IMG/VR virus record: IMGVR_UViG_3300017917_002374
Coordinates: 1-64,000 of that record
Length of the DNA: 64,000 nucleotides
Direction: 5' to 3' (one strand)
The translations under genes were made by a program, and so were the position numbers. Positions 12,525 to 57,007 of the stretch are shown here, piece after piece (the stretch's first letter is position 1; each line of letters begins with the position of its first letter). The notes below the pieces were generated by a model. That model was not told where the DNA came from. It ran no database searches and worked only from the letters and a program-made list of their open reading frames with translations.

Positions 12525-12873
12525 CAATTTTATTACTCCACCAGATTTCGTTGACAACAACTTACCAACTATATTGGTAGTTGATGCTGCTTGGGATGAT
12601 ATAGAAACTCTAGCATTGTATTGTCAAAATTCAAATTATCTTTATAATGTGTATATCTATCAAGATGTGATGTTCGATACCGAATGGCTGCAACAAGCTG
12701 CACTAAGATCACATGCCATAATCATGAACTCAGATCAAAGTGCATGCACCAACGAAAAAAATAAATTTTTGAAAGAATCTAAAACTTGGTATTACGGTCC
12801 TAATCGTTATCTAGGCAACAACAATCAGTTGCAATCTTTGATTGAATTTTTTATAAAACATAATGAACAATAA
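12517..12873 (+). CDS. Hypothetical protein
   Basis: Overlapping packing with both neighbours. Confidence 0.6.
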   Translation: MHSNFITPPDFVDNNLPTILVVDAAWDDIETLALYCQNSNYLYNVYIYQDVMFDTEWLQQAALRSHAIIMNSDQSACTNEKNKFLKESKTWYYGPNRYLGNNNQLQSLIEFFIKHNEQ

Positions 12874-14071
12874 TGTACACCATGTGCTGTGCAATTTTTG
12901 TGGTAAAAGTCGCAGCGAAGTAGACAAACTTATCGTGGCCAATGACGCCGGTATATGCAACGAGTGTATTGAGTTTTGTGCAGATCTCTTGAATCGCGAA
13001 CGTATCAAAAATATTCAATCTGATAAGAAAATTTCAAGATCACTTGATGCAGTCAAACTCAAGAACTATCTTGATGAGTATATTATTGGTCAAGAGCAGG
13101 CCAAGATAGCTCTAGCAGTGGCAGTGGTCAATCACTACAAAAGAATTTATTTTCAACCCGACATAGAACTAGAAAAAAGCAATCTGCTGATATATGGTCC
13201 TACTGGTGTTGGTAAAACCATGCTGGCAAAAACTGTAGCCAAATATCTAAATGTGCCATTTGTGATTGCTGATGCTACCACTCTTACTCAGGCAGGATAT
13301 GTAGGCGATGATGTTGAAAGTGTGATTTCAAGATTGTTTAGCGAAGCAGATTTTGACATTGACAAGTGCCAACAGGGCATAGTGTTTATTGACGAAATTG
13401 ATAAAATCAGTAGAAAAAATGAAAGCAGTAATCTGCACCGTGATGTAGGCGGCGAGGGTGTGCAACAGGCCCTGCTCAAGCTGGTCGAAGGTACCAAATG
13501 CACTGTGAGTGTGGAGTCAAGAAAAAAACACCCCAGTGTTGATACTGTGGAAATAGACACAAAAAATATTCTTTTTGTTGCAGGTGGAGCATTTGACGGG
13601 CTGGAAAAAGTGGTATCCGCTAGAGCCAAAGGCAACAGCATAGGATTTACATCTCAGGCTGTGGAAAATTCTTCTGGCCAGGTGTTGGCCGAAGATTTTA
13701 TCAACTACGGCATGATTCCTGAATTTATAGGCAGATTTCCTGTTACAGTAAGTGTTAATGCACTGGGACTAGAAGATCTAACAAGAGTGCTAGTTGAACC
13801 TAAAAGTAGTTTACTGCAACAAATGCAGTGGTATTTCAACACCGATGACATTGAGTTAGAGTTTGAAGATCAAGCAGTTCTAGCTATTGCACAACAGGCT
13901 CTGGACAGAGGAATTGGAGCAAGAGGACTTAAAACCATTTTAGAGCAGTGTCTTATGCCTGTTATGTATTCTTTGAACGAACTGAAAACTCAAGGTATAA
14001 GTAAAGTGAGGATTACTAAAAAAGTAATTACAGAAAATCAAAAACCGGAATTTATTAAACATGAGAGATAA
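12863..14071 (+). CDS. clpX: ClpX AAA+ unfoldase
   Basis: CNFC/CNEC zinc domain, GPTGVGKT, GYVG pore loop, DEIDK, RKKHP, IGF loop, GARGL. Confidence 0.96.
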   Translation: MNNNVHHVLCNFCGKSRSEVDKLIVANDAGICNECIEFCADLLNRERIKNIQSDKKISRSLDAVKLKNYLDEYIIGQEQAKIALAVAVVNHYKRIYFQPDIELEKSNLLIYGPTGVGKTMLAKTVAKYLNVPFVIADATTLTQAGYVGDDVESVISRLFSEADFDIDKCQQGIVFIDEIDKISRKNESSNLHRDVGGEGVQQALLKLVEGTKCTVSVESRKKHPSVDTVEIDTKNILFVAGGAFDGLEKVVSARAKGNSIGFTSQAVENSSGQVLAEDFINYGMIPEFIGRFPVTVSVNALGLEDLTRVLVEPKSSLLQQMQWYFNTDDIELEFEDQAVLAIAQQALDRGIGARGLKTILEQCLMPVMYSLNELKTQGISKVRITKKVITENQKPEFIKHER

Positions 14072-14297
14072 ACCACCTTTTTTAAATGGATCCATTGTTG
14101 TGGTTGTAAACGACAACGTGGAAAAAGCTCTGCGCAAGCTGAAAAAGAAAGTGCAAGAAAGCGGCATTCTTCAAGAGTTGCGTGAAAGAGAACAGTACGA
14201 AAAACCAACCACTTCTAGAAAACGAGCCAAAAACGCAGCACGTCGTCGTTGGCAGAAAAAACTGGAAAGCGAGCAGTTGCCTAAAAAACTGTTCTAA
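14061..14297 (+). CDS. rpsU: Ribosomal protein bS21
   Basis: VEKALRKLKKKVQESGIL.ELRERE.YEKPT. Confidence 0.93.
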   Translation: MRDKPPFLNGSIVVVVNDNVEKALRKLKKKVQESGILQELREREQYEKPTTSRKRAKNAARRRWQKKLESEQLPKKLF

Positions 14298-14548
14298 TGT
14301 ATATTGAATTTTGGTTGCCCAGCGGTGCAGGAGGTGTTGCTGCTTCGTATGCTAGCAGTGTGATACAACGAGAGATCAAGTCCTGGGCATCAAAATACAA
14401 TGTGGTCTACCGAACCAAGATAGTAAAGTACACTCTTAGACTATCGTTCAATAACAGTGAAGACTATGTGCATTTCCAGTTGAGCTGGAATCCTGACAAT
14501 GTTTTTGCCACTCGTTACTCCATTATAGAACCTGGCCAAATAAATTGA
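14297..14548 (+). CDS. Hypothetical protein
   Basis: TAATG coupling to rpsU. Confidence 0.55.
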   Translation: MYIEFWLPSGAGGVAASYASSVIQREIKSWASKYNVVYRTKIVKYTLRLSFNNSEDYVHFQLSWNPDNVFATRYSIIEPGQIN

Positions 14549-14603
14549 CTTTTGAGAGTCAATCATGTATAAATACACATGTAAGATGCCTACGGGGTCT
14601 TGC
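14545..14603 (+). promoter_or_regulatory. Composite early/late promoter and structured leader of hsp20
   Basis: TTGACT(14545)-17-TATAAA with full TATAAATA (14568); hairpin with c(UACG)g loop at 14581-14603. Confidence 0.6.
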
Positions 14604-14637
14604 AAGCCAATTACTTGCTTATTGAAAGGAGAAAAAA

Positions 14638-15075
14638 ATGGCTACTATTCTAACTCTAGATCTACCTACGCTGCATCGTCGTTTTATTGGTTTTGATCAA
14701 TTCTTTGACGAAATAGAGCGTACATTTAATGTGCAAAAACAAGACAACTATCCTCCTCATAACATAGTGCGTATCAATGACACACATTTCATGATTGAAT
14801 TAGCTGTGGCAGGATTCGCCGAGGACGAGTTAGATGTTAGTTTGTACAACAATAAATTGATTGTTAAAGGCGAACGCAAGCGAGACATTGATGAAGCTTG
14901 GCAGTATCTACACCGAGGTATTGCCAGTAGAGACTTTGAACGCAGCTTTCCTCTTAACGAAAATGTTGAAGTCAAACAGGTTACTGTGCAAAATGGTATC
15001 ATGACTATTAATTTGGAATTGGTTGTTCCTGAGGAACAAAAAGCCAAAAAGATAGCAATTACCTTTGCCAAGTAA
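14638..15075 (+). CDS. Small heat-shock protein Hsp20 (IbpA-like)
   Basis: IGFD, NYPPHNI, ELAVAGF, YLHRGIASRDFERSF, NGIMTINL. Confidence 0.95.
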   Translation: MATILTLDLPTLHRRFIGFDQFFDEIERTFNVQKQDNYPPHNIVRINDTHFMIELAVAGFAEDELDVSLYNNKLIVKGERKRDIDEAWQYLHRGIASRDFERSFPLNENVEVKQVTVQNGIMTINLELVVPEEQKAKKIAITFAK

Positions 15076-15122
15076 TATAATAGTGGGTGCAACATCGCAC
15101 CCACTATATCAAAGAGGAAACA

Positions 15123-15446
15123 ATGGGAAACGCAGATACTTTGACCAAAACACAAAGCAGTCTTAAAATTGAACCAAAATTAAATATTCCTGAACCACGG
15201 TTATGGAAAGTGATTTTTATCAATGATGAAATCACTACCATGGAATTTATCATAGAAGTTCTAAAAAACATATTTGATTACGACGAAGATCAAGCTCAGA
15301 ACATGACCATGAGAATACACCAAGAGGGTGCAGGTGTAATCGCAATTTATCCGCATGAAATCGCAGAACAAAAAGGTATTGAAACCACTTTGCTTGCAAG
15401 AAACAATGGATTCCCACTACAGGTTAAACTAGAACCAGAAGGATAA
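15123..15446 (+). CDS. clpS: ClpS N-end-rule adaptor
   Basis: WKVIFINDEITTMEFI, IHQEG, EIAEQK, GFPL. Confidence 0.92.
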   Translation: MGNADTLTKTQSSLKIEPKLNIPEPRLWKVIFINDEITTMEFIIEVLKNIFDYDEDQAQNMTMRIHQEGAGVIAIYPHEIAEQKGIETTLLARNNGFPLQVKLEPEG

Positions 15447-15448
15447 TC

Positions 15449-16006
15449 ATGGATGTAATGTTGGACTTAGAAACTCTAAGCACAAGACCCGAAAGCGTTA
15501 TTCTTACCATTGGTGCAGTAAAATTTGATCCTTGGGGCGAGGATGTGGATGCAGAACACGGACTTTACTTTCGTGTGAACGTTGATCAACAACTTGCTCT
15601 CGGGCGTCATGTGCAAGAAGAAACTATACAGTGGTGGAGTAAACAACCAGCAGAAGTTTTTGAAGAAGCCATGGGCGAAAATGATCGTGTGGGTTTAGAA
15701 GATATGACTGCTGGACTCAATCGTTTTCTAGTAGGAGTAAACAACATCTGGTGCCAAGGTCCTGCATTTGATATTGTGATTCTAGAAAATCTTTACAGAC
15801 AATTGGTCAAGCCCACTCCCTGGCAGTTTTGGCAAATTCGCGACAGTCGTACACTGTTTGGTGTACACGGCGATCCAAGAGAAAAAGATCGTAAGGCAGC
15901 ACATAATGCACTCATGGACTGTTACTATCAAGCCATTGGTGTACAGCAGATATATAAACAGGCAAAAGTGCCCAACCCCAAGGAGAGAGCTTATGCCCAT
16001 GTATGA
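15449..16006 (+). CDS. DEDDh 3'-5' exonuclease (DexA/Rv2179c-like)
   Basis: MLDLETL, FDIVIL, RDSRT, HNALMD. Confidence 0.9.
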   Translation: MDVMLDLETLSTRPESVILTIGAVKFDPWGEDVDAEHGLYFRVNVDQQLALGRHVQEETIQWWSKQPAEVFEEAMGENDRVGLEDMTAGLNRFLVGVNNIWCQGPAFDIVILENLYRQLVKPTPWQFWQIRDSRTLFGVHGDPREKDRKAAHNALMDCYYQAIGVQQIYKQAKVPNPKERAYAHV

Positions 16007-26134: not shown

Positions 26135-26620
26135 ATGGCTAGACCAAATCCTATACGACGTATCATGCAATCCGCGCTGCCTAGTGTTACATATCAGCGA
26201 CAGAAACTTTTTAGGCCCTCTCCAAAAGATGTAAAATATGCGTATAAAATAATCAACAGGCATGTGTTTAACAATCAGCTGAAACTGCCACCTATCCAAC
26301 TGGGCGTGACCAGGGGCTATTGGGGCATGTGTATTGGGTTACACGAAGAAACTAGTCCTAACACTTTGTGCAGTCTAAAACTCAGCGACAAATACTTTTG
26401 TGTGCAATGGTTCATGAACACTCTGGCACACGAAATGGTACATCAATATCAATGGGACATCAATAGTGAATACAGACAGCAGCACGGACTGGAACCTTTG
26501 ATGAGCCACGGTCCTAGTTTTTTTGCCTGGCGTGATGTCATGGACTACTATGGACTGAGCTTGAAAACTGCACATGGACAGCGACGTTGGTTTGCACATC
26601 AAGATTTCAATAAGTGTTGA
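26135..26620 (+). CDS. SprT-like zinc metalloprotease
   Basis: TLAHEMVHQYQ, HGPSF. Confidence 0.85.
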   Translation: MARPNPIRRIMQSALPSVTYQRQKLFRPSPKDVKYAYKIINRHVFNNQLKLPPIQLGVTRGYWGMCIGLHEETSPNTLCSLKLSDKYFCVQWFMNTLAHEMVHQYQWDINSEYRQQHGLEPLMSHGPSFFAWRDVMDYYGLSLKTAHGQRRWFAHQDFNKC

Positions 26621-26670
26621 CAAACTTCCCGCAGTTCTCTATAATTGACTCTAGTTAACCAGGAGTCAGT

Positions 26671-27261
26671 ATGCCCCATTTTGTACCTACCGTATTAGAA
26701 AAAACCAGCAACGGCGAACGTGCGTATGATATTTACAGTCGCCTGCTTAAAGATCGTATTGTGATGCTGGACACAGATGTAAATGAACATTCAGCCAGCC
26801 TTGTGGTTAGCCAATTGTTGTTCCTAGAAAGTGAAAACCCTGATGCAGACATTCTTTTCTATATTAACAGCCCTGGTGGCGTGGTTACTGCTGGCATGGC
26901 TATCTATGATACTATGCAGTACATTAAACCTGACGTATCTACTATTGTAATGGGCCAGGCCTGCTCCATGGGCAGTTTGTTAGCACAAGCCGGCGCAGCA
27001 GGCAAACGCTATATTCTGCCCAATGCACGTCACATGATACACCAACCGTCAGGGGGTGCAGGTGGGCAAGCCACAGACATGGAAATTCAGGTGCGTGAGA
27101 TACTCAAAATGAAGCGTACACTTACAGAAATCTATGTCAAGCACAATAGTGCAGGCAAAGTGTATGACGAAATCCTAGCAGACATGGAACGTGATTTCTT
27201 TATGAGCGCACATGAAGCTGTGACGTATGGACTGGCAGATCAAGTGATTGAAACCAGATAA
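26671..27261 (+). CDS. clpP: ClpP protease subunit
   Basis: [24 protein letters not shown] (Ser), MIHQP (His), ERD (Asp); promoter TTGACA(26617)-17-TATAAT. Confidence 0.97.
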
Positions 27262-43471: not shown

Positions 43472-45646
43472 TTGATTCTCAATAACGCACCGCAGCACGA
43501 AGCTGTTCTGTCTAACGTAGGCGAGATTGGCGAGTTCCGTATTCGTAACTCAGCCAAGGCATTTTCCATTCTTTCGTCAGGACTTTACGCTAACAAAATT
43601 CGTGCAATTATCCGCGAACTATCCTGTAATGCTGTGGACAGTCATGTGGCTGCTGGTCGCAGTGATGTGCCTTTTGATGTGCATCTACCCAACAACCTGG
43701 ACCCTACCTTTCGCATCCGTGACTATGGCACTGGCCTATCTCACGACCAGGTGTTGAACATCTACACCACCTACTTTGAGTCAACCAAGACCGAGAGCAA
43801 TCAGTTTATTGGTGCGCTGGGTCTTGGTAGCAAAAGTCCTTTTTCTTACACCGATAACTTTACTGTTACCGCTATCAAGGACGGCACTCGCAATGTATAT
43901 TCGGCTTTTATCAACGGCGAAGGCGTGCCTTCTGTTGCACTCATGCACAGTGAGGCCAGTACGGAATCAAACGGTGTAGAAGTACAATTTGCTGTCACAG
44001 ATCGTTGGGACTTTGACAAGTTTTATGACGAAGCACGACAGGTGTACACCTATTTTGCTCTGCGCCCTAATGTGTTAGGTGGCGATCGCGAGTTCAAGTT
44101 TCGCGATGTAGAATACAAAGATCGCAACATCATTCCTGGTGTACACTATGTGGGTCGCGGTGCCAGCCGGGCAATAATGGGCAATATTGCCTATCCTATT
44201 GACATGCCCAATGCAGACACCAACCTTGGCGAACTGCATCGGCTGTTGGGCTGCGGTCTAGAAATGCACTTTGACATTGGCGAACTGGACTTCCAGGCGT
44301 CGCGTGAGGGTCTTTCTTATATCCCTAGCACCATTGAAGCAATCAAGCAAAAACTGATTGCTCTTAATGCTCAGTTGGCAGTGCATCTAGAAATGGAAGC
44401 CAGTGCTATCACCAATGACTGGGAAAAGGTCTACTTCCTGCAGAAAAAGGTGCATGAAGATCTCTGGGCAGGTGCCACTCGTGCCTATATCACAGCCAAG
44501 CAACCTCCCATGATGGATTACACTAACCTGCACTATGTTCGTGCTCAGGCACCAAAGATCAGCTTGAAAGAACTGGCCTCACGACACAATATCTCTATTC
44601 TGGCCTTTAACAAGACTCGTCACAGTGTTACCTGCCACGAGATCAAACCGCACAAGGATTTCACTGATCGTGCGCTGAGCCAGTACGAAGAATCTTGGCA
44701 GTTCAGTGTGGATGCTGGCACCATCTTTGTCAAGAATGATCTCAAGGTAGGTGCACTGACTCGTGCCAAGTACCATTGGCGTCATGCTGCCAGCAAAGGC
44801 GTTAAACTGCCCAGCGAAGGTTACAGTCATAATGTGTATGTGCTAAGTCCTGCTACCAAGGGTCATGCCATGGACACTGTGGGTTTCTTTGCTGCTCTCA
44901 ACATGCCACCTGAGAACCAGATTGTTAAGGCCAGTGACCTGATTGAAAAAGAACGCAAGGTCAGCTCGGGCAATCGCGCCAAGGATGTGCGCATTGTACG
45001 TCTGGAACGCAAGGATTATGGTCGTCGTGGCTATGAAAATCTAGTATGGGGCGAAGCGGGTCGTGCAGATCAATACGATACAAGCAAGAACTATTATTAT
45101 ATTCCGTTGAGTGGATACACTGCTATTGACTGCAAGATGGACCCAAAAACTCTGCAGGACAAAATGGCCAATAGTGGTATTCCTGCACTGGCTGTGGATG
45201 TGTATGGTGTACGAAAAGGTGACATTGAATTTATTCGTACTCAGAAGAACTGGATCCCGTTGGAGACTCATGTGAGTGCGGTGCTCAACAATCTCAGCGC
45301 CAAAGATCTGGGTAATTTGGCCTTGAATGAAATTGACAATGGCGCCCTGTTTCGTTATAATAAGACCATAGCGCACAACATCACCAATCGTAACAGTGCC
45401 TATCTTGCATTGATTAGTAAATTTGAAAATCTCAGCAAGGTTCGCTACAGCAAGCATGCATTGGAGTATTTGTTTAAAACCTATGCGCCCGGTGTGGGTG
45501 TTCAGCCCACCATTGACGCATTGGTAGCGGAACTGGATGCTGTGAAACGTCGTTATCCGCTGCTGGATTCAATTCGTGATTACTCCATTCCTGAATTGGC
45601 AGTGGCACAGTATATTAACTTGATTGACAACTCGAAAGGCAACTGA
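43472..45646 (+). CDS. rIIA: rIIA protein (GHKL ATPase N-terminus)
   Basis: IRELSCNAVDSH, IRDYGTG, STK, IGALGLGSKSPFSYTD, SREGLSY; precedes rIIB. Confidence 0.9.
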   Translation: MILNNAPQHEAVLSNVGEIGEFRIRNSAKAFSILSSGLYANKIRAIIRELSCNAVDSHVAAGRSDVPFDVHLPNNLDPTFRIRDYGTGLSHDQVLNIYTTYFESTKTESNQFIGALGLGSKSPFSYTDNFTVTAIKDGTRNVYSAFINGEGVPSVALMHSEASTESNGVEVQFAVTDRWDFDKFYDEARQVYTYFALRPNVLGGDREFKFRDVEYKDRNIIPGVHYVGRGASRAIMGNIAYPIDMPNADTNLGELHRLLGCGLEMHFDIGELDFQASREGLSYIPSTIEAIKQKLIALNAQLAVHLEMEASAITNDWEKVYFLQKKVHEDLWAGATRAYITAKQPPMMDYTNLHYVRAQAPKISLKELASRHNISILAFNKTRHSVTCHEIKPHKDFTDRALSQYEESWQFSVDAGTIFVKNDLKVGALTRAKYHWRHAASKGVKLPSEGYSHNVYVLSPATKGHAMDTVGFFAALNMPPENQIVKASDLIEKERKVSSGNRAKDVRIVRLERKDYGRRGYENLVWGEAGRADQYDTSKNYYYIPLSGYTAIDCKMDPKTLQDKMANSGIPALAVDVYGVRKGDIEFIRTQKNWIPLETHVSAVLNNLSAKDLGNLALNEIDNGALFRYNKTIAHNITNRNSAYLALISKFENLSKVRYSKHALEYLFKTYAPGVGVQPTIDALVAELDAVKRRYPLLDSIRDYSIPELAVAQYINLIDNSKGN

Positions 45647-50145: not shown

Positions 50146-50330
50146 AAACAGTTTGGATCATGGTCGTGCTAGTAATAGCAGATGGTGAATGGAGAGAGTG
50201 GGATCACCATTACGCTAGACTAGAAGAATGCCTTGAAGCCAAAGAAATACTCACACATCGCAGAGAACATCTTTTAACCATACGCTGCGAACCAAGACAA
50301 GTAAAATCACTTGACATTCCTGAAAAATAA
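50142..50330 (+). CDS. Small protein with N-terminal hydrophobic segment and Cys pair
   Basis: MKTVWIMVVLVI...EEC...RC. Confidence 0.55.
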   Translation: MKTVWIMVVLVIADGEWREWDHHYARLEECLEAKEILTHRREHLLTIRCEPRQVKSLDIPEK

Positions 50331-50345
50331 ATATACACTGTAATC

Positions 50346-50717
50346 TATTGCTGTATGAAGCAGATTGAAAGGCGTTCTGGACGCGGGTTCGACTCCCGCC
50401 TGGTCCACCAAAAGTATATTACTAAGAGTCCAGGTTCAGAGCGTGGCATAATATACTTCTGATGGGCCAGACATGGTTTCGACAGGGTGATGAGTAAGGA
50501 AGTGGACAGCACGGCAATGCGAAAGCCGTAGGACAGGGGTAACCCGGTCGTAGAAGCAAACCAAGTAAATGCAAAAGCATCTACAACAGAGAGCGCAGTA
50601 AAAGTAACCAAAGCACGTGGTTTCCGTTTCGGCGGTGCTCGTGTTGCGGCAGCTGACGCTGCTTTCGCCTAATCAGCGAAAACTCCGGGGCAGTTATGCC
50701 TTGTAACCCAAAATAGC
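50346..50717 (+). ncRNA. ssrA: Circularly permuted (two-piece) tmRNA
   Basis: Acceptor piece with T-arm gcggg-ttcgact-cccgc and ctggtcc-ACCA ends at 50410; coding piece starts gggccag at 50464; 7-bp acceptor stem with G3.U70; tag ORF 50571-50672; promoter TTGACA(50311)-17-TACACT; outer ends approximate. Confidence 0.92.
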
Positions 50718-50741
50718 AAAACGGCCTTCGGGCCGTTTTTT
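50718..50741 (+). terminator. Terminator after tmRNA
   Basis: aaaacggcc-ttcg-ggccgtttt plus T. Confidence 0.85.
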
Positions 50742-50758
50742 CTTTTATAAATATCTGC

Positions 50759-50959
50759 ATGTGGGTATTAATCATCAGCTTGTATTTGCCGCAGCCTTTA
50801 GGATTCACTCAGAGCAAAGGCATCATTCAGGCTCCACAGCCCAGCTACGAAACCTGCATGCGCGAACGCGACAGAATCAAAGCCACTTGGTACACAGACG
50901 GCTATCGTGTGAGTCCACGTTGTGTGTACATCAAATACTACGATCCTCGTGGCAGTTAA
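50759..50959 (+). CDS. Small hypothetical protein
   Basis: TATAAATA-N5-ATG; MWVLIISL, Cys pair. Confidence 0.55.
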   Translation: MWVLIISLYLPQPLGFTQSKGIIQAPQPSYETCMRERDRIKATWYTDGYRVSPRCVYIKYYDPRGS

Positions 50960-51058: not shown

Positions 51059-52069
51059 ATGAAACAACTCGTAGCGGCGCTATTGGCCATGTTGGCAATC
51101 AGCGCACAAGCGGCCGATATTACCGGCGCAGGAGCAACATTCCCTTTCCCAATCTACAGCAAGTGGGCAGAAGCCTACAAGGCGCAAACAGGAATTGGCC
51201 TTAACTATCAATCAATTGGATCAGGTGGCGGTATTCGTCAAATCAAAGCCAAGACAGTGGATTTTGGCGCTAGCGACATGCCACTCAAATTGGAAGATTT
51301 AGAAAAAGATGATCTGGTGCAGTTTCCGGTAATTATTGGAGGTGTGGTGCCAGTGGTGAATGTAGAAGGCATTCAGCCAGGACAATTAAAACTAACCAGC
51401 GATGTTGTAGCTGGTATTTTTTTAGGAAAAATTACCCGGTGGAACGACACTGCAATTGCAGCACTGAACCCTGACACAAAATTGCCTGCTCAAAACATCA
51501 CCGTGGTTCATCGCAGTGACAGTTCAGGCACAACATTCTTGTTCACAGACTGGCTGAGCAAGACCAGTGCAGAATGGCGAGACCAAGTGGGCGCAGGTGC
51601 AGGAGTCAAATGGCCCGTGGGCGTGGGTGGCAAAGGCAACGAAGGTGTGGCCACACAAGTGCAACAGGTTAAAGGAGCCATTGGTTATGTGGAGTATGCG
51701 TATGCCAAACGTAATAAGATTCCGCACACACAGCTCAAGAACCGTGATGGCAAGTTTGTACAACCAGACGATCTTACTTTTAAAGCAGCCGCTGATGGTG
51801 CAGAATGGAGTGGCACCAATGGCATGTATACTCTGCTCACAGATCAAAAAGGCCAAAATGCTTGGCCAATCACGGGTGCATCGTTTATAATCATGCACAA
51901 GAAACAACAGGACCCTCTAGTGGGTAGAGCTGTGCTGAAGTTTTTTAGTTGGGCATTCAACAACGGCGGTAAGATGGCCGAGGACTTGGACTACGTACAC
52001 TTGCCAAAAAGTTTACAAGACAAAGTTCGTGTTGAATGGACAAAATTTAACCTAGGAGAAATCAAATGA
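51059..52069 (+). CDS. pstS: Phosphate ABC transporter substrate-binding protein
   Basis: GAGATFP, YQSIGSGGG, DFGASD, RSDSSGTT, GAIGYVE, WPI. Confidence 0.97.
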   Translation: MKQLVAALLAMLAISAQAADITGAGATFPFPIYSKWAEAYKAQTGIGLNYQSIGSGGGIRQIKAKTVDFGASDMPLKLEDLEKDDLVQFPVIIGGVVPVVNVEGIQPGQLKLTSDVVAGIFLGKITRWNDTAIAALNPDTKLPAQNITVVHRSDSSGTTFLFTDWLSKTSAEWRDQVGAGAGVKWPVGVGGKGNEGVATQVQQVKGAIGYVEYAYAKRNKIPHTQLKNRDGKFVQPDDLTFKAAADGAEWSGTNGMYTLLTDQKGQNAWPITGASFIIMHKKQQDPLVGRAVLKFFSWAFNNGGKMAEDLDYVHLPKSLQDKVRVEWTKFNLGEIK

Positions 52070-52626
52070 AGTTGGTAAAATATCTAGCAGTCGCACTGCT
52101 GTTGACAGCAGGTGCTGCACAAGCACAGTTGAAATATTATGGAACTTATGAATTCACTGATGAAGAAAATCGCGTGACAGATGCTAACAAGCAGAAAAGT
52201 GGTTTTGTGCTGGGTGGCAAAAATGCTCAAGGTTGGGACTTCAGTGCCAAGTTTGACATGGGTCATGAGTCAGGCGCCAGCAAGGGTGCAGAAGTGCGCA
52301 TTCGTAAAAACTGGGCCAATGCTGTTGGCACATTGAGCCCATGGTTGGGAGTGCGTGGTGGCGAAGCCATCACCACAGATGACAACTGGACCTACTATGC
52401 ACTGGAGGGTGGCGTTAAGTTTCCCATCGTGGGCGCACTCACAGGTGATGTAGGGTACCGTTATCGCAACGCAGTGGAACAGAGTCGTGCATACCAAACT
52501 GATCGTTATTACGGCATGGTCAGCTATGCGTTAACCAAACAGGACAGTGTGGGCTTGCGCTATGCTCGCAGCTACGGAGACAGTGAAACCAATGCTTGGC
52601 GATTGAGTTATACACGCAGTTTTTAA
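52066..52626 (+). CDS. Outer-membrane beta-barrel (porin-like)
   Basis: Signal peptide, alternating strands, C-terminal YTRSF. Confidence 0.8.
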   Translation: MKLVKYLAVALLLTAGAAQAQLKYYGTYEFTDEENRVTDANKQKSGFVLGGKNAQGWDFSAKFDMGHESGASKGAEVRIRKNWANAVGTLSPWLGVRGGEAITTDDNWTYYALEGGVKFPIVGALTGDVGYRYRNAVEQSRAYQTDRYYGMVSYALTKQDSVGLRYARSYGDSETNAWRLSYTRSF

Positions 52627-55447: not shown

Positions 55448-55699
55448 ATGCTAGATTATGCCTTGACATTCTTTTCCATTTTTTTTCTTGATATTGTGTA
55501 TACATACTATCTAAGATGTGTGGCCAAAGAGCATGTGTTGGGCGCCAGTTTTTGGAGTGTGGCCTGTTATCTACTGGGCAGCATTGCAGTAATCAGCTAT
55601 ACCACAAATCATTGGTTGATTATTCCTGCGGTGATTGGTGCTTTCTGTGGGACCTATGTAGGGATGAAGCTGAAAAAGCTGAATTTTTTAACAGAGTAA
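55448..55699 (+). CDS. Small 3-TM membrane protein
   Basis: Hydrophobicity pattern. Confidence 0.6.
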   Translation: MLDYALTFFSIFFLDIVYTYYLRCVAKEHVLGASFWSVACYLLGSIAVISYTTNHWLIIPAVIGAFCGTYVGMKLKKLNFLTE

Positions 55700-55707
55700 A
55701 TACTGTT

Positions 55708-56352
55708 ATGAAACCTACCATTGCCATGTTTTTGTATCAGCCTCGTGCAAGTGTACAATGCGGTAATGCAATGATGGAGGCTCTATCTGACTACTACCGA
55801 TTCAAGATCTTTACCAAGCAAGAAATGGAAGAAGATTTTTTTGATGATGTAGACATTGTGGCTTTTCCGGGTGGTGACGGCGATAGTGAAAGCTATCGCT
55901 TTTTAATGAAACATCACCAAAAACGCATTCAAAATTTTGTTGCCAATGGCGGGCGTTATTTGGGCATTTGCATGGGCGCATACTGGGCAGGATCACATTA
56001 TTTTAATATTCTACATCATGTGGATGCTGTGCAGTATATCACTCGTCCTGGCACAGACACACGTAGACCTCATGCCAAGGCCTGCCCAGTGAACTGGCTT
56101 GGTGAACCCATGCGCATGTATTTTTACGATGGATGTGCATTGGTTGGAGACGAGCGTAGATTTGAAACAGTGGCTCGATACGCAAACGGTGACCCAATGG
56201 CCATATTTCAGGATCGTGTTGGAATCATGGGTTGCCATCCAGAAAGTCAACAGTGGTGGTACAACATGTACAACTATCTCAAGCCACACTATCATAATGG
56301 TTACCATCATCGTTTGCTGTTGGATTTTGTTGACCAACTCATGCGTCAATAA
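55708..56352 (+). CDS. BPL_N / class I glutamine amidotransferase-like protein
   Basis: FPGG, YLGICMGAY, HPE; likely start MKPTI at 55708. Confidence 0.8.
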   Translation: MKPTIAMFLYQPRASVQCGNAMMEALSDYYRFKIFTKQEMEEDFFDDVDIVAFPGGDGDSESYRFLMKHHQKRIQNFVANGGRYLGICMGAYWAGSHYFNILHHVDAVQYITRPGTDTRRPHAKACPVNWLGEPMRMYFYDGCALVGDERRFETVARYANGDPMAIFQDRVGIMGCHPESQQWWYNMYNYLKPHYHNGYHHRLLLDFVDQLMRQ

Positions 56353-56437: not shown

Positions 56438-56473
56438 TGTTTTATGCACTGCAACATTATTCAAGGAGATAAA

Positions 56474-57007
56474 ATGAAAACCGTAGGTGATAAGATTGAG
56501 AAGTTTGCCGTTACTGGTGTGAACCCAGGCAAGGATGATTTCTTTGCCATTACAGATGAGAGCTTTGCTGGCAAGTGGAAAGTGATTGTTTACTATCCAA
56601 AAGACTTTACCTTTGTGTGTCCAACTGAAATCGTGGCATACGACAAACTGTTCCAGGATTTTGCTGACCGTGACGCTGTGCTGCTCACAGGCTCAACAGA
56701 CAACGAGTTCTGCAAGTTGGCATGGCAGAACGCACATGAGGATCTGAAAAAGATTCGTCACATTCAGTTTGCTGACACTGCTCGTGATGACAACAGTCTG
56801 ATCAATCAACTGGGCGTGTTCTATGCACCAGCTGGTGCAGCACTACGTGCCACCTTTATTGTTGATCCAGAGGGTGTGATTCAGCATGTGACCGTGAACA
56901 ACCTCAACGTTGGTCGTAGTCCAGAAGAAACACTGCGTGTGCTGGATGCACTGCAAACAGGCGAACTGTGTGCATGTAACCGTAACATTGGCGGCGAAAC
57001 ACTTTAA
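56474..57007 (+). CDS. ahpC: Peroxiredoxin AhpC
   Basis: YPKDFTFVCPTE, RATFIVDP, GRSPEETLR, ELCAC. Confidence 0.95.
   Translation: MKTVGDKIEKFAVTGVNPGKDDFFAITDESFAGKWKVIVYYPKDFTFVCPTEIVAYDKLFQDFADRDAVLLTGSTDNEFCKLAWQNAHEDLKKIRHIQFADTARDDNSLINQLGVFYAPAGAALRATFIVDPEGVIQHVTVNNLNVGRSPEETLRVLDALQTGELCACNRNIGGETL

What the first reader, a model, noticed from the sequence alone, without database searches (positions are those of the whole stretch)
50311..50741. Permuted two-piece tmRNA with an unusually long tag
Seen: the CCA-ending acceptor piece comes before the 5' piece. The 53-nt spacer forms its own stem (aagtatatta/taatatactt). G3.U70 is present and the pieces pair (cagggtg/cgttctg, acagc/gctgt). 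The tag after the typical gtaaat-GCA context is AKASTTESAVKVTKARGFRFGGARVAAADAAFA (33 codons), ending AFA rather than LAA. Known: permuted tmRNAs occur in alphaproteobacteria, some cyanobacteria and some betaproteobacteria, and the E. coli encoded tag is 10 aa. Inference: the tag may direct rescued proteins to the phage's own ClpXP, or away from host SspB/ClpXP.
Basis: partly seen in the sequence, partly recalled or inferred. Interest (0 to 1): 0.75.

Follow-up and report, generated by a model that had tools for sequence, protein, structure and literature searches.

The report
Phage two-piece tmRNA, long tag
A 355-kb freshwater jumbo phage carries its own split (two-piece) ribosome-rescue RNA whose peptide tag is about three times the usual length; the tag is conserved as a peptide and belongs to a wider, apparently undescribed set of long-tag tmRNAs in large phages.

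Summary
ARAGORN and two Rfam models (RF04321 at 90.6 bits, RF01850 at 87 bits) call a permuted tmRNA at 50311-50745 (+) with a 33-codon tag. The acceptor stem with G3.U70, the T arm, both inter-piece helices, the resume context, helix 5 with the stop codon in its loop, the promoter and the terminator are all present.

The long frame is real. Three environmental relatives keep 33 codons. They show synonymous-only changes in an invariant 14-aa block and in the terminal AAFA, and they have a variable 7-codon linker.

RNA-library contigs match the coding piece exactly but do not cover the flanking genes.

The phage encodes ClpX, ClpA-like, ClpS, ClpP and a small heat-shock protein. It has no SmpB, SspB, Lon or AlaRS, so it must use host SmpB and AlaRS.

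The tag is not unique. Of 85 distinct permuted tmRNA genes found in viral contigs, 25 have tags of 23-31 aa, and a close relative has 34 aa. All 14 bacterial tmRNAs of the same type have 10-aa tags.

Long tags co-occur with phage ClpA/ClpS/ClpP rather than with ClpX. Phage-specific ClpXP targeting remains untested.

Verdict: a new variant of a known kind.

The parts
50311..50339 (+). Sigma-70-type promoter: TTGACA, 17-nt spacer, TACACT. The predicted transcription start is near 50346.
   Evidence: 10 of 12 matches. The Rfam beta_tmRNA model aligns its own promoter-like columns here. A -10-like box sits at the same place in L171 and L129.
50346..50410 (+). Acceptor piece (5' end inferred). It holds the 5' strands of the two inter-piece helices, the T arm, the 3' strand of the acceptor stem, discriminator A50407 and the encoded CCA at 50408-50410.
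50383..50399 (+). T arm: stem GCGGG/CCCGC with loop TTCGACT.
   Evidence: Compensatory variants GTGGG/CCCAC (L135), GGGGG/CCCCC (L128) and CCGGG/CCCGG (L132) appear.
50411..50463 (+). Intervening spacer of 53 nt, removed on maturation (inferred). Basal stem 50412-50421 / 50449-50458.
   Evidence: The stem is kept with compensatory changes in L135 and with a different sequence in L171, while spacer length varies from 53 to more than 200 nt.
50464..50745 (+). Coding piece. It runs from G1 of the acceptor stem through the D-loop-like stretch, the 3' strands of the inter-piece helices, two hairpins, the tag frame, helix 5 and the 3' hairpin to the terminator.
   Evidence: RNA-library contigs are identical to 50474-50586.
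50464..50470 (+). 5' strand of the acceptor stem (GGGCCAG). G50466 pairs with T50404 to give G3.U70, the alanine identity pair.
   Evidence: L171 has GGGGGTG/CACCTCC, with three compensatory pairs and G3.U70 kept.
50483..50511 (+). 3' strands of the two helices that hold the pieces together: 50483-50489 pairs with 50373-50379, and 50507-50511 pairs with 50349-50353.
   Evidence: Compensatory changes occur in L171.
50512..50549 (+). Two hairpins between helix 2 and the resume codon (the PK1 region). The first is 50512-50515 / 50525-50528. The second is an extra hairpin at 50532-50549, found only in part of the family. A pseudoknot was not resolved.
   Evidence: covariation CGGC/GCCG versus CGGG/CCCG in L168, and GAC/GTC versus GAT/ATC in L135.
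50565..50584 (+). Small hairpin containing the resume codon. It is invariant at nucleotide level across the whole AKAST tag family.
   Evidence: -5.6 kcal/mol, z = -4.4; invariant columns.
50571..50672 (+). Tag reading frame of 33 codons plus TAA. Zones: codons 1-5 A(K/N)AST; codons 6-8 variable; codons 9-22 invariant block AVKVTKARGFRFGG; codons 23-29 variable linker of fixed length; codons 30-33 AAFA.
50663..50681 (+). Helix 5 (50663-50668 / 50676-50681), with the stop codon in its 7-nt loop.
   Evidence: cofold. The stop codon in the helix 5 loop is the canonical arrangement (PMC1168896).
50686..50703 (+). 3' hairpin followed by the conserved TTGTAAC stretch.
   Evidence: Covariation GGCA/TGCC, GGTT/AACC and GGTA/TACC. 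Aligned by RF01850.
50718..50745 (+). Intrinsic terminator: a 9-bp stem with a TTCG loop, followed by a T run.
12863..14071 (+). Phage ClpX (context; a candidate tag-recognising unfoldase, inferred).
   Evidence: NF003745 at 510 bits; TIGR00382 at 471 bits, over the cut-off; motifs kept relative to E. coli ClpX.
14638..15446 (+). IbpA-like small heat-shock protein (14638-15075) and ClpS adaptor (15087-15446) (context).
26671..27261 (+). Phage ClpP of the true ClpP type, not a prohead protease (context).
   Evidence: PF00574 at 267 bits; NF001368 at 302 bits

Best explanation
This is a functional, phage-encoded two-piece tmRNA of the beta type.

How it most likely works:
1. It is transcribed as one precursor from its own sigma-70-like promoter to an intrinsic terminator.
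2. The spacer is excised. RNase P cuts at G50464, and 3' trimming proceeds to the encoded CCA at 50410.
3. This leaves a roughly 65-nt acceptor piece and a roughly 280-nt coding piece, held together by the acceptor stem and two further helices.
4. The phage has no AlaRS and no SmpB. Host AlaRS charges the RNA through G3.U70, and host SmpB/EF-Tu deliver it to stalled ribosomes.
5. Translation resumes at GCA 50571 and adds Ala plus 33 encoded residues.

The tag is modular. It has a resume-proximal A(K/N)AST, an invariant 14-residue basic and aromatic block, a 7-residue variable linker of fixed length, and a non-polar AAFA end.

Most likely AAFA-COOH is the degron that enters a ClpP-linked unfoldase. 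That unfoldase could be the phage's ClpA-like protein or ClpX, the host's, or both. The invariant block would be an auxiliary docking or enhancer element, playing the part that the SspB-binding half plays in the E. coli tag.

Shown: the identity and architecture of the RNA, peptide-level selection on the whole frame, and presence in RNA libraries.

Inferred: the processing sites, use of host factors, proteolysis as the outcome, and which protease is involved.
For: RNA identity. Compensatory changes occur in every helix among relatives.

Frame:
- Four window-lineage sequences all have 33 codons and the same stop. They are the window, a variant in DNA run X9, L168-170 and L171.
- Codons 9-22 and 30-33 are identical as peptide. 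Synonymous changes occur at codons 10, 12, 14, 15, 17, 20, 22 and 31.
- In the core, pS is 0.15-0.34 and pN is 0-0.07 for pairs involving the window or L171; X9v vs L168 differ at no synonymous site there. In the linker, pN is 0.25-0.62 for those pairs (0.06 for X9v vs L168).
- Sister families show the same pattern, including a TCT-to-AGT serine switch.
- The nearest relative, L135, has a homologous 34-aa tag.

Expression: contigs from RNA libraries X17 and X15 match 50474-50586 with no differences and reach depth of up to about 340. They give no cover on the flanking ORFs, which the DNA runs do cover, and no contig bridges the spacer.

Host dependence: no SmpB (also 0 of 24 related contigs) and no AlaRS.

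Proteolysis context:
- The genome encodes ClpX, ClpS, ClpP, a ClpA-like protein and a small heat-shock protein.
- At least one of ClpA, ClpS or ClpP occurs in 7 of 7 long-tag lineages, against 4 of 12 short-tag lineages.

The bipartite SspB/ClpX reading of the E. coli tag is from PMC8138137.
Against: - No isolate, host, tagged peptide or degradation assay exists.
- The RNA evidence comes from assembled contigs. It shows neither exact ends nor alanylation, and DNA carry-over cannot be formally excluded.
- AFA is not the canonical LAA end, and no data show that any Clp unfoldase accepts it.
- Phages with ClpAPS and ClpX can have ordinary 10-aa tags (G009), so Clp genes do not require a long tag.
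- The single complex prediction gave no verdict.
- PK1 could not be drawn.
Confidence: 0.7

Rival explanations
1. The long tag with its AFA end is an orthogonal degron read by the phage's own ClpXP and ignored by host SspB/ClpXP. The phage would then run a private degradation channel.
For: The phage encodes a full ClpX and ClpP. The AFA ending is unique to this lineage among 65 distinct viral tags. There is a precedent for orthogonality: the long Mesoplasma florum tag is read by its Lon and is used as an orthogonal degron (PMC8138137).
Against: ClpX is absent from the other complete long-tag phages, G002 and G017. It is present in G009, which has a 10-aa tag. The phage ClpX pore loops, RKH-type loop and zinc domain look canonical. 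No phage SspB-like adaptor was found. The host is unknown, so avoidance of host SspB cannot be judged.
Confidence: 0.15
2. The tag serves a fate other than Clp proteolysis. Possibilities are hand-off to host Lon, FtsH or a chaperone, or sequestration with the phage small heat-shock protein. The basic, aromatic, alternating block would act as the recognition or aggregation element.
For: Long tags with several determinants are typical where Lon reads the tag (Mycoplasma, PMC8138137). The block is rich in alternating hydrophobic and basic residues (read from the sequence). An IbpA-like small heat-shock gene lies between clpX and clpS.
Against: The phage has no Lon. The C-terminal non-polar end is conserved as in Clp-type degrons. 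Sister long tags end in canonical ALAA.
Confidence: 0.2
3. The RNA mainly titrates host SmpB or competes with host tmRNA, as an inhibitor of host trans-translation. Tagging would be incidental.
For: A phage tRNA-like-domain-only tmRNA (mycobacteriophage DS6A) resembles a molecule that inhibits tmRNA, perhaps by titrating SmpB (PMC4131195). This phage has no SmpB of its own.
Against: The coding part is complete and under peptide-level purifying selection. Helix 5 and the stop codon are canonical.
Confidence: 0.05
4. The 33-codon frame is a prediction artefact. On this view, translation resumes near the end of the frame and only a short tag is made.
For: The RF01850 alignment places its consensus tag columns on the last 8 codons. 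A 33-codon open frame alone would occur by chance about one time in five (own estimate).
Against: The conserved TAAAT-GCA resume context lies at 50566-50573 and is aligned with high posterior probability by RF04321. There is no such context downstream. Synonymous-only variation across codons 9-22 shows that part is translated. Frame and length are kept in all relatives, including across a compensating +1/-1 indel pair.
Confidence: 0.03

Closest known systems
Betaproteobacterial two-piece tmRNA (Rfam RF01850; Sharkady and Williams 2004, as cited in PMC9004378 and PMC11915505)
   Same: The gene order is circularly permuted. The tRNA-like domain, inter-piece helices, resume context, 3' hairpin and even the promoter and terminator columns align over the full model.
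   Different: The bacterial examples examined here (Advenella and relatives, plus 4 of 151 sampled genomes of that order) all encode 10-aa tags ending LAA or IAA. This one encodes 33 aa ending AFA. It has an extra hairpin before the resume codon and lies in a phage.
Phage-encoded two-piece tmRNAs: OM43 phage Melnitz and marine myophages (PMC9004378); Stenotrophomonas Menderavirus phages and Xanthomonas jumbo phage XacN1
   Same: Each is a complete permuted ssrA on a lytic-type phage genome that has many tRNAs and no smpB. XacN1 and the Menderavirus phages are of the same beta type (RF01850 at 92-108 bits).
   Different: Those tags are 12-14 aa. Melnitz is of the alpha type and carries a glutamine riboswitch. 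No long modular tag has been described for them in the papers I could search.
Long ssrA tags of Mycoplasma and Mesoplasma, read by Lon (PMC8138137; the 27-aa length and the YAFA ending are from my own knowledge of Gur and Sauer 2008)
   Same: The tag is much longer than 10 aa, ends in AFA, and carries recognition information spread along its length.
   Different: That is a one-piece tmRNA in organisms without ClpXP. Here the genome has ClpX, ClpA, ClpS and ClpP and no Lon. There is no sequence similarity beyond the last three residues.
E. coli ssrA tag with the SspB-ClpXP delivery system (PMC8138137)
   Same: The layout is bipartite: an upstream binding element, a spacer, and a C-terminal non-polar degron with a free carboxylate.
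   Different: No SspB homologue is in the phage. The upstream element is 14 aa and unrelated in sequence, the spacer is 7 aa, and binding partners are unknown.

Membership tests
tmRNA (ssrA), permuted two-piece form | tRNA-like domain: a 7-bp acceptor stem with G3.U70, a T arm, discriminator A and CCA, and no anticodon arm. | tested here: met
   Covariation in the acceptor and T stems.
tmRNA (ssrA), permuted two-piece form | Circular permutation: the CCA-ending 3' half lies upstream of the 5' half, separated by an excised spacer, and the two pieces are joined by helix 2 pairings. | tested here: met
   RF04321 at 90.6 bits and RF01850 at 87 bits are both over their gathering scores.
tmRNA (ssrA), permuted two-piece form | mRNA-like domain: an Ala resume codon in the conserved upstream context, an open tag frame, and a stop codon in the loop of helix 5. 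| tested here: met
   Peptide-level selection on the frame.
tmRNA (ssrA), permuted two-piece form | Pseudoknot PK1 upstream of the resume codon. | tested here: inconclusive
   Two covarying hairpins lie at 50512-50549, but I could not draw a pseudoknot. The Rfam models do not score pseudoknots.
tmRNA (ssrA), permuted two-piece form | Processing into two RNAs, alanylation, SmpB-dependent entry into stalled ribosomes, and tagging. | not testable with these tools
   Indirect only. RNA-library contigs cover the coding piece and not the spacer or flanks. SmpB and AlaRS are absent from the phage, so host factors would be needed.
ClpXP/ClpAP ssrA-type degron | A C-terminal non-polar tripeptide with a free carboxylate, recognised by the unfoldase pore (LAA in E. 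coli). | tested here: inconclusive
   The end is AFA and is invariant in 4 lineage members. Sister tags end LAA, IAA, FAV or VLA.
SspB-type adaptor-assisted tag | An SspB adaptor is present and an AANDxxY-like element sits at the tag's N-terminus. | tested here: not met
   No SspB in the phage. The tag begins AKAST. The host is unknown.

The most novel reading that the evidence does not exclude
A clade of large freshwater and soil phages has turned the tmRNA tag into a programmable address label. On this reading the tags are two to three times the bacterial length. Each is built of a lineage-specific invariant docking block, a linker of fixed length and a terminal degron. They route every rescued nascent chain to the phage's own ClpA/ClpS/ClpP (and, in this phage, ClpX) machinery. 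That would give the phage a private proteolysis and amino-acid recycling channel during infection, possibly coupled to read-through caused by its own amber suppressor tRNA.
Probability: 0.2. Interest if true: 0.8.

Novelty: new variant of a known kind. Interest (0 to 1): 0.6.

Why it matters
tmRNA tags are the textbook example of a short, nearly universal degron, and 10 aa is the commonest length (PMC11915505). Here a phage lineage keeps a tag three times longer under clear peptide-level selection. The same tendency recurs in about 30% of the distinct permuted tmRNA genes found in viral contigs, while all bacterial tmRNAs of the same RNA type that I examined keep 10 aa.

This suggests that phages use trans-translation for something beyond what their hosts do. 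It also yields concrete, testable peptides: an invariant 14-aa block, a 7-aa linker and an AFA end. The candidate partners (ClpX, ClpA-like, ClpS, ClpP, small heat-shock protein) are encoded in the same genome.

If the tags prove protease-specific, they would also be a source of orthogonal degrons for synthetic biology, as the Mesoplasma tag and Lon pair already is.

Practical point for annotation: ARAGORN missed several of these genes that have long spacers, and Rfam RF04321 found them.

Tried and rejected
1. Complex prediction of the tag with the dimeric zinc-binding N-domain of the phage ClpX plus Zn. It gave no verdict (score 0.01) and is not evidence either way.
2. Metagenome pattern scan for tags beginning AKASTT[ED]. 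It returned 15 chance hits and no tmRNA.
3. Megablast of 20 kb around the locus against cultured phages. No match. By ClpX and the ClpA-like protein, the nearest cultured phages are only 41-49% identical. The host was therefore not identified.
4. The conserved 186-aa gene downstream of many of these tmRNAs was considered as a cofactor. Its relatives are annotated as opacity-protein-like outer-membrane proteins, so it was dropped.
5. Contigs fetched through homologues of that gene lacked the tmRNA region or had no DNA available. Fetching through PstS homologues worked.
6. Search for similarity of the tag to the phage's own proteins or C-termini. Nothing was significant.
7. The spacer stem's fold energy is not significant on its own (z = -0.9). 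Its support comes from covariation only.
8. PK1 could not be resolved.
9. I found no published statement of the maximum natural tag length. I therefore do not claim a record, and relative L135 is in any case longer at 34 aa.

Full report
WHAT IS THERE

The window is the first 64 kb of a complete 354,959-bp viral record with direct terminal repeats. It has 42.7% G+C and 30 tRNA genes.

ARAGORN calls one permuted tmRNA at 50318-50763 on the + strand. Its 33-codon tag runs from GCA at 50571 to TAA at 50670-50672. Against all of Rfam, the only hits over threshold in the window are tmRNA_permuted (RF04321, 90.6 bits, E 3.9e-16) and beta_tmRNA (RF01850, 87 bits, E 7.9e-25, full model length).

I checked each helix base by base:
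- Acceptor stem GGGCCAG / CTGGTCC, with G3.U70 = G50466.T50404, followed by A and the encoded CCA (50407-50410).
- T stem 50383-50387 / 50395-50399.
- Inter-piece helix 50373-50379 / 50483-50489.
- Inter-piece helix 50349-50353 / 50507-50511.

The spacer is 53 nt (50411-50463), with a 10-bp basal stem at 50412-50421 / 50449-50458. Helix 5 (50663-50668 / 50676-50681) carries the stop codon in its loop, which is the canonical arrangement (PMC1168896). A promoter, TTGACA-17-TACACT at 50311-50339, and an intrinsic terminator at 50718-50745 bracket the gene.

IS THE RNA REAL AND CONSERVED?

Relatives were obtained in three ways: pattern scans of viral contigs, Rfam on loci that ARAGORN missed, and contigs fetched through homologues of the neighbouring PstS gene.

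Alignments show compensatory changes in every helix:
- The acceptor stem becomes GGGGGTG / CACCTCC in L171, with G3.U70 kept.
- The T stem becomes GTGGG / CCCAC in L135.
- The inter-piece helices change in L171.
- The hairpins upstream of the resume codon change in L168 and L135.
- The 3' hairpin changes across the family.

The spacer varies from 53 nt to more than 200 nt, yet its basal stem is kept by covariation. I could not draw PK1.

IS THE 33-CODON FRAME TRANSLATED?

An open frame of this length is not improbable on its own, so I looked for coding constraint. Four members of the window's own lineage are available: the window, a diverged variant in DNA run X9 reconstructed from the listed differences, L168-170, and L171.

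- All four have 33 codons and the same stop.
- Codons 9-22 (AVKVTKARGFRFGG) and 30-33 (AAFA) are identical as peptide. Synonymous changes occur at codons 10, 12, 14, 15, 17, 20, 22 and 31.
- Between the window and the X9 variant, codons 1-22 and 30-33 carry 7 synonymous changes and no non-synonymous change.
- Over the core, pS is 0.15-0.34 and pN is 0-0.07 for pairs involving the window or L171; X9v vs L168 differ at no synonymous site there. In codons 23-29, pN is 0.25-0.62 for those pairs (0.06 for X9v vs L168), and a +1/-1 indel pair restores the frame.
- A variant seen in an RNA library shows three further third-position changes.
- Sister families behave alike. The same peptide is encoded by different codon strings, including a TCT-to-AGT serine switch.
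- The nearest complete relative, L135 (78% identical over 268 nt), encodes a homologous 34-aa tag.
- The resume context TAAAT-GCA and codons 1-5 are invariant at nucleotide level and form a small hairpin (z = -4.4).

I conclude that the whole frame is translated from the predicted resume codon. With the alanine carried by the charged RNA, 34 residues would be appended.

EXPRESSION

Near-identical copies of this tmRNA occur in pond, lake, river and soil metagenomes.

In two metatranscriptome runs, assembled contigs match 50474-50586 with no differences. That stretch includes the lineage-specific extra hairpin. Summed depth reaches about 340. The flanking ORFs have no cover in those runs, although the DNA runs do cover them. 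No RNA contig crosses the spacer.

This fits an abundant, separate coding piece. It remains contig-level evidence without exact ends.

GENOMIC CONTEXT

The phage encodes the following:
- ClpX (12863-14071; over the TIGR00382 and NF003745 cut-offs)
- an IbpA-like small heat-shock protein (14638-15075)
- ClpS (15087-15446)
- a true ClpP (26671-27261)
- a 763-aa ClpA-like ATPase at genome position 110495-112786 (TIGR02639, 824 bits, one full-length stretch, below the cut-off)

Compared with E. coli ClpX, the phage ClpX keeps the zinc finger, GYVG, the pore-2 loop, a basic RKKH stretch at the RKH loop, and the IGF loop.

The genome has no SmpB, SspB, Lon or AlaRS. The tmRNA must therefore work with host SmpB and AlaRS.

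THE WIDER PICTURE

Beta-type permuted tmRNAs are annotated in Stenotrophomonas Menderavirus phages and in Xanthomonas jumbo phage XacN1, with 12-14-aa tags. Two-piece tmRNAs in marine phages have been described (PMC9004378), and huge phages are known to carry tmRNAs (PMC7162821).

A pattern built on the tRNA-like domain found 113 stretches in IMG/VR. In one genome each of 185,579 bacterial and archaeal species it found only 11 stretches, mostly in Advenella.

Among the viral hits there are 85 distinct genes. Sixty of them have tags of 9-15 aa, and 25 have tags of 23-31 aa, of which two are dubious calls. The long tags typically start ANA[DNS]TF or AKAST. Many end in a complete canonical ANDxxFALAA, as if an extension had been added in front.

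All 14 bacterial tmRNAs of this type that I examined encode 10 aa.

The tmRNA neighbourhood is shared among many of the viral contigs. It includes rIIA, PstS, an outer-membrane-protein-like gene, a GATase-like gene and a peroxiredoxin. These are therefore related large phages, and the tmRNA is inherited within the clade.

LINK TO PROTEASES

I searched 24 large contigs, plus this genome, for the relevant genes.
- SmpB is absent from all of them.
- ClpX occurs only in this genome and in G009, whose tag is 10 aa.
- ClpA-like, ClpS and ClpP are common.

Counting by distinct tag lineage, at least one of ClpA, ClpS or ClpP is present in 7 of 7 long-tag lineages and in 4 of 12 short-tag lineages. By my own arithmetic the one-sided Fisher p is about 0.007. 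Genome size and shared descent confound this result.

The association is suggestive. It points to ClpAPS rather than ClpX.

MECHANISM

The layout of the tag parallels the E. coli tag: an invariant block, a linker of fixed length, and a non-polar C-terminus. In E. coli an upstream element binds SspB and the terminal residues enter ClpX (PMC8138137).

I therefore favour a degron with an auxiliary docking element, read by ClpP-linked unfoldases of the phage, the host, or both. This step is inference.

The rival explanations are listed with their tests: a non-proteolytic fate or host Lon, an SmpB sponge, and a frame artefact.

VERDICT

The RNA is a new member of a known kind. The long, modular, peptide-conserved tag, recurrent in large phages, is a new variant that I could not find described in the searchable literature.

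Noticed in passing
genome G000:C1:318225-318298 (outside the window): A tRNA with anticodon CUA (amber suppressor, encoded CCA) sits in a tRNA cluster. TAG ends 28 of 249 ORFs of 150 aa or more. XacN1, which has the same type of tmRNA, carries two such tRNAs. Suppressor tRNAs raise the load on trans-translation in E. coli (Ueda et al. 2002, listed in PMC8012679), so the two features may be linked.
   Followed up: partly
window 12863-16006 and 26135-27261: A proteostasis cluster. It holds ClpX, an IbpA-like small heat-shock protein and ClpS, followed directly by an Rv2179c-like 3'-5' exoribonuclease (15449-16006). That enzyme could trim tRNA or tmRNA 3' trailers down to the encoded CCA. An SprT-like protease (26135-26620) lies just upstream of ClpP.
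   Followed up: partly
window 50411-50463; L135:2931-3013; L171 about 1060-1250; L175 about 1440-1650; L127: The excised spacer varies from 53 nt to more than 300 nt among relatives, but its basal stem next to the CCA end and G1 is kept by covariation. This looks like a processing determinant. ARAGORN missed the genes in L129, L130, L135, L137 and L175, and Rfam RF04321 found the four that I ran through it (L175 was not scanned; its gene was found by BLASTN and a resume-motif search).
   Followed up: partly
viral loci L011-L123 versus bacterial loci L138-L148: The same tRNA-domain pattern hits 113 stretches in IMG/VR but only 11 in one genome each of 185,579 prokaryote species (mostly Advenella). 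Only 4 of 151 sampled genomes of that order have a beta-type tmRNA over the cut-off. This RNA type may be more common in phages than in cells, which raises the question of which way it was transferred.
   Followed up: partly
window 52066-52626: A 186-aa protein whose relatives JGI annotates as an opacity-protein-like surface antigen. It lies directly downstream of the tmRNA in at least ten related viral loci, with both long and short tags. Its function in a phage is unknown.
   Followed up: partly
window 43472-45646, 51059-52069, 55516-56352, 56444-57007: rIIA-like, PstS phosphate-binding, BPL_N/GATase-like and AhpC/TSA peroxiredoxin genes. The peroxiredoxin is 76-89% identical across about 25 viral loci that also carry a tmRNA, which is unusually well conserved for a phage accessory gene.
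   Followed up: no
window 50565-50584: The resume codon and codons 1-5 are invariant at nucleotide level across otherwise diverged AKAST-type tmRNAs, and they form a small hairpin (z = -4.4). This is an RNA-level constraint on top of the coding constraint.
   Followed up: partly
L012, L028, L056, L115, L134 and others: Many long viral tags look like an N-terminal extension of about 13-18 aa placed in frame before a complete canonical ANDxxFA[LI]AA tag. This suggests origin by upstream shift or duplication of the resume region.
   Followed up: no
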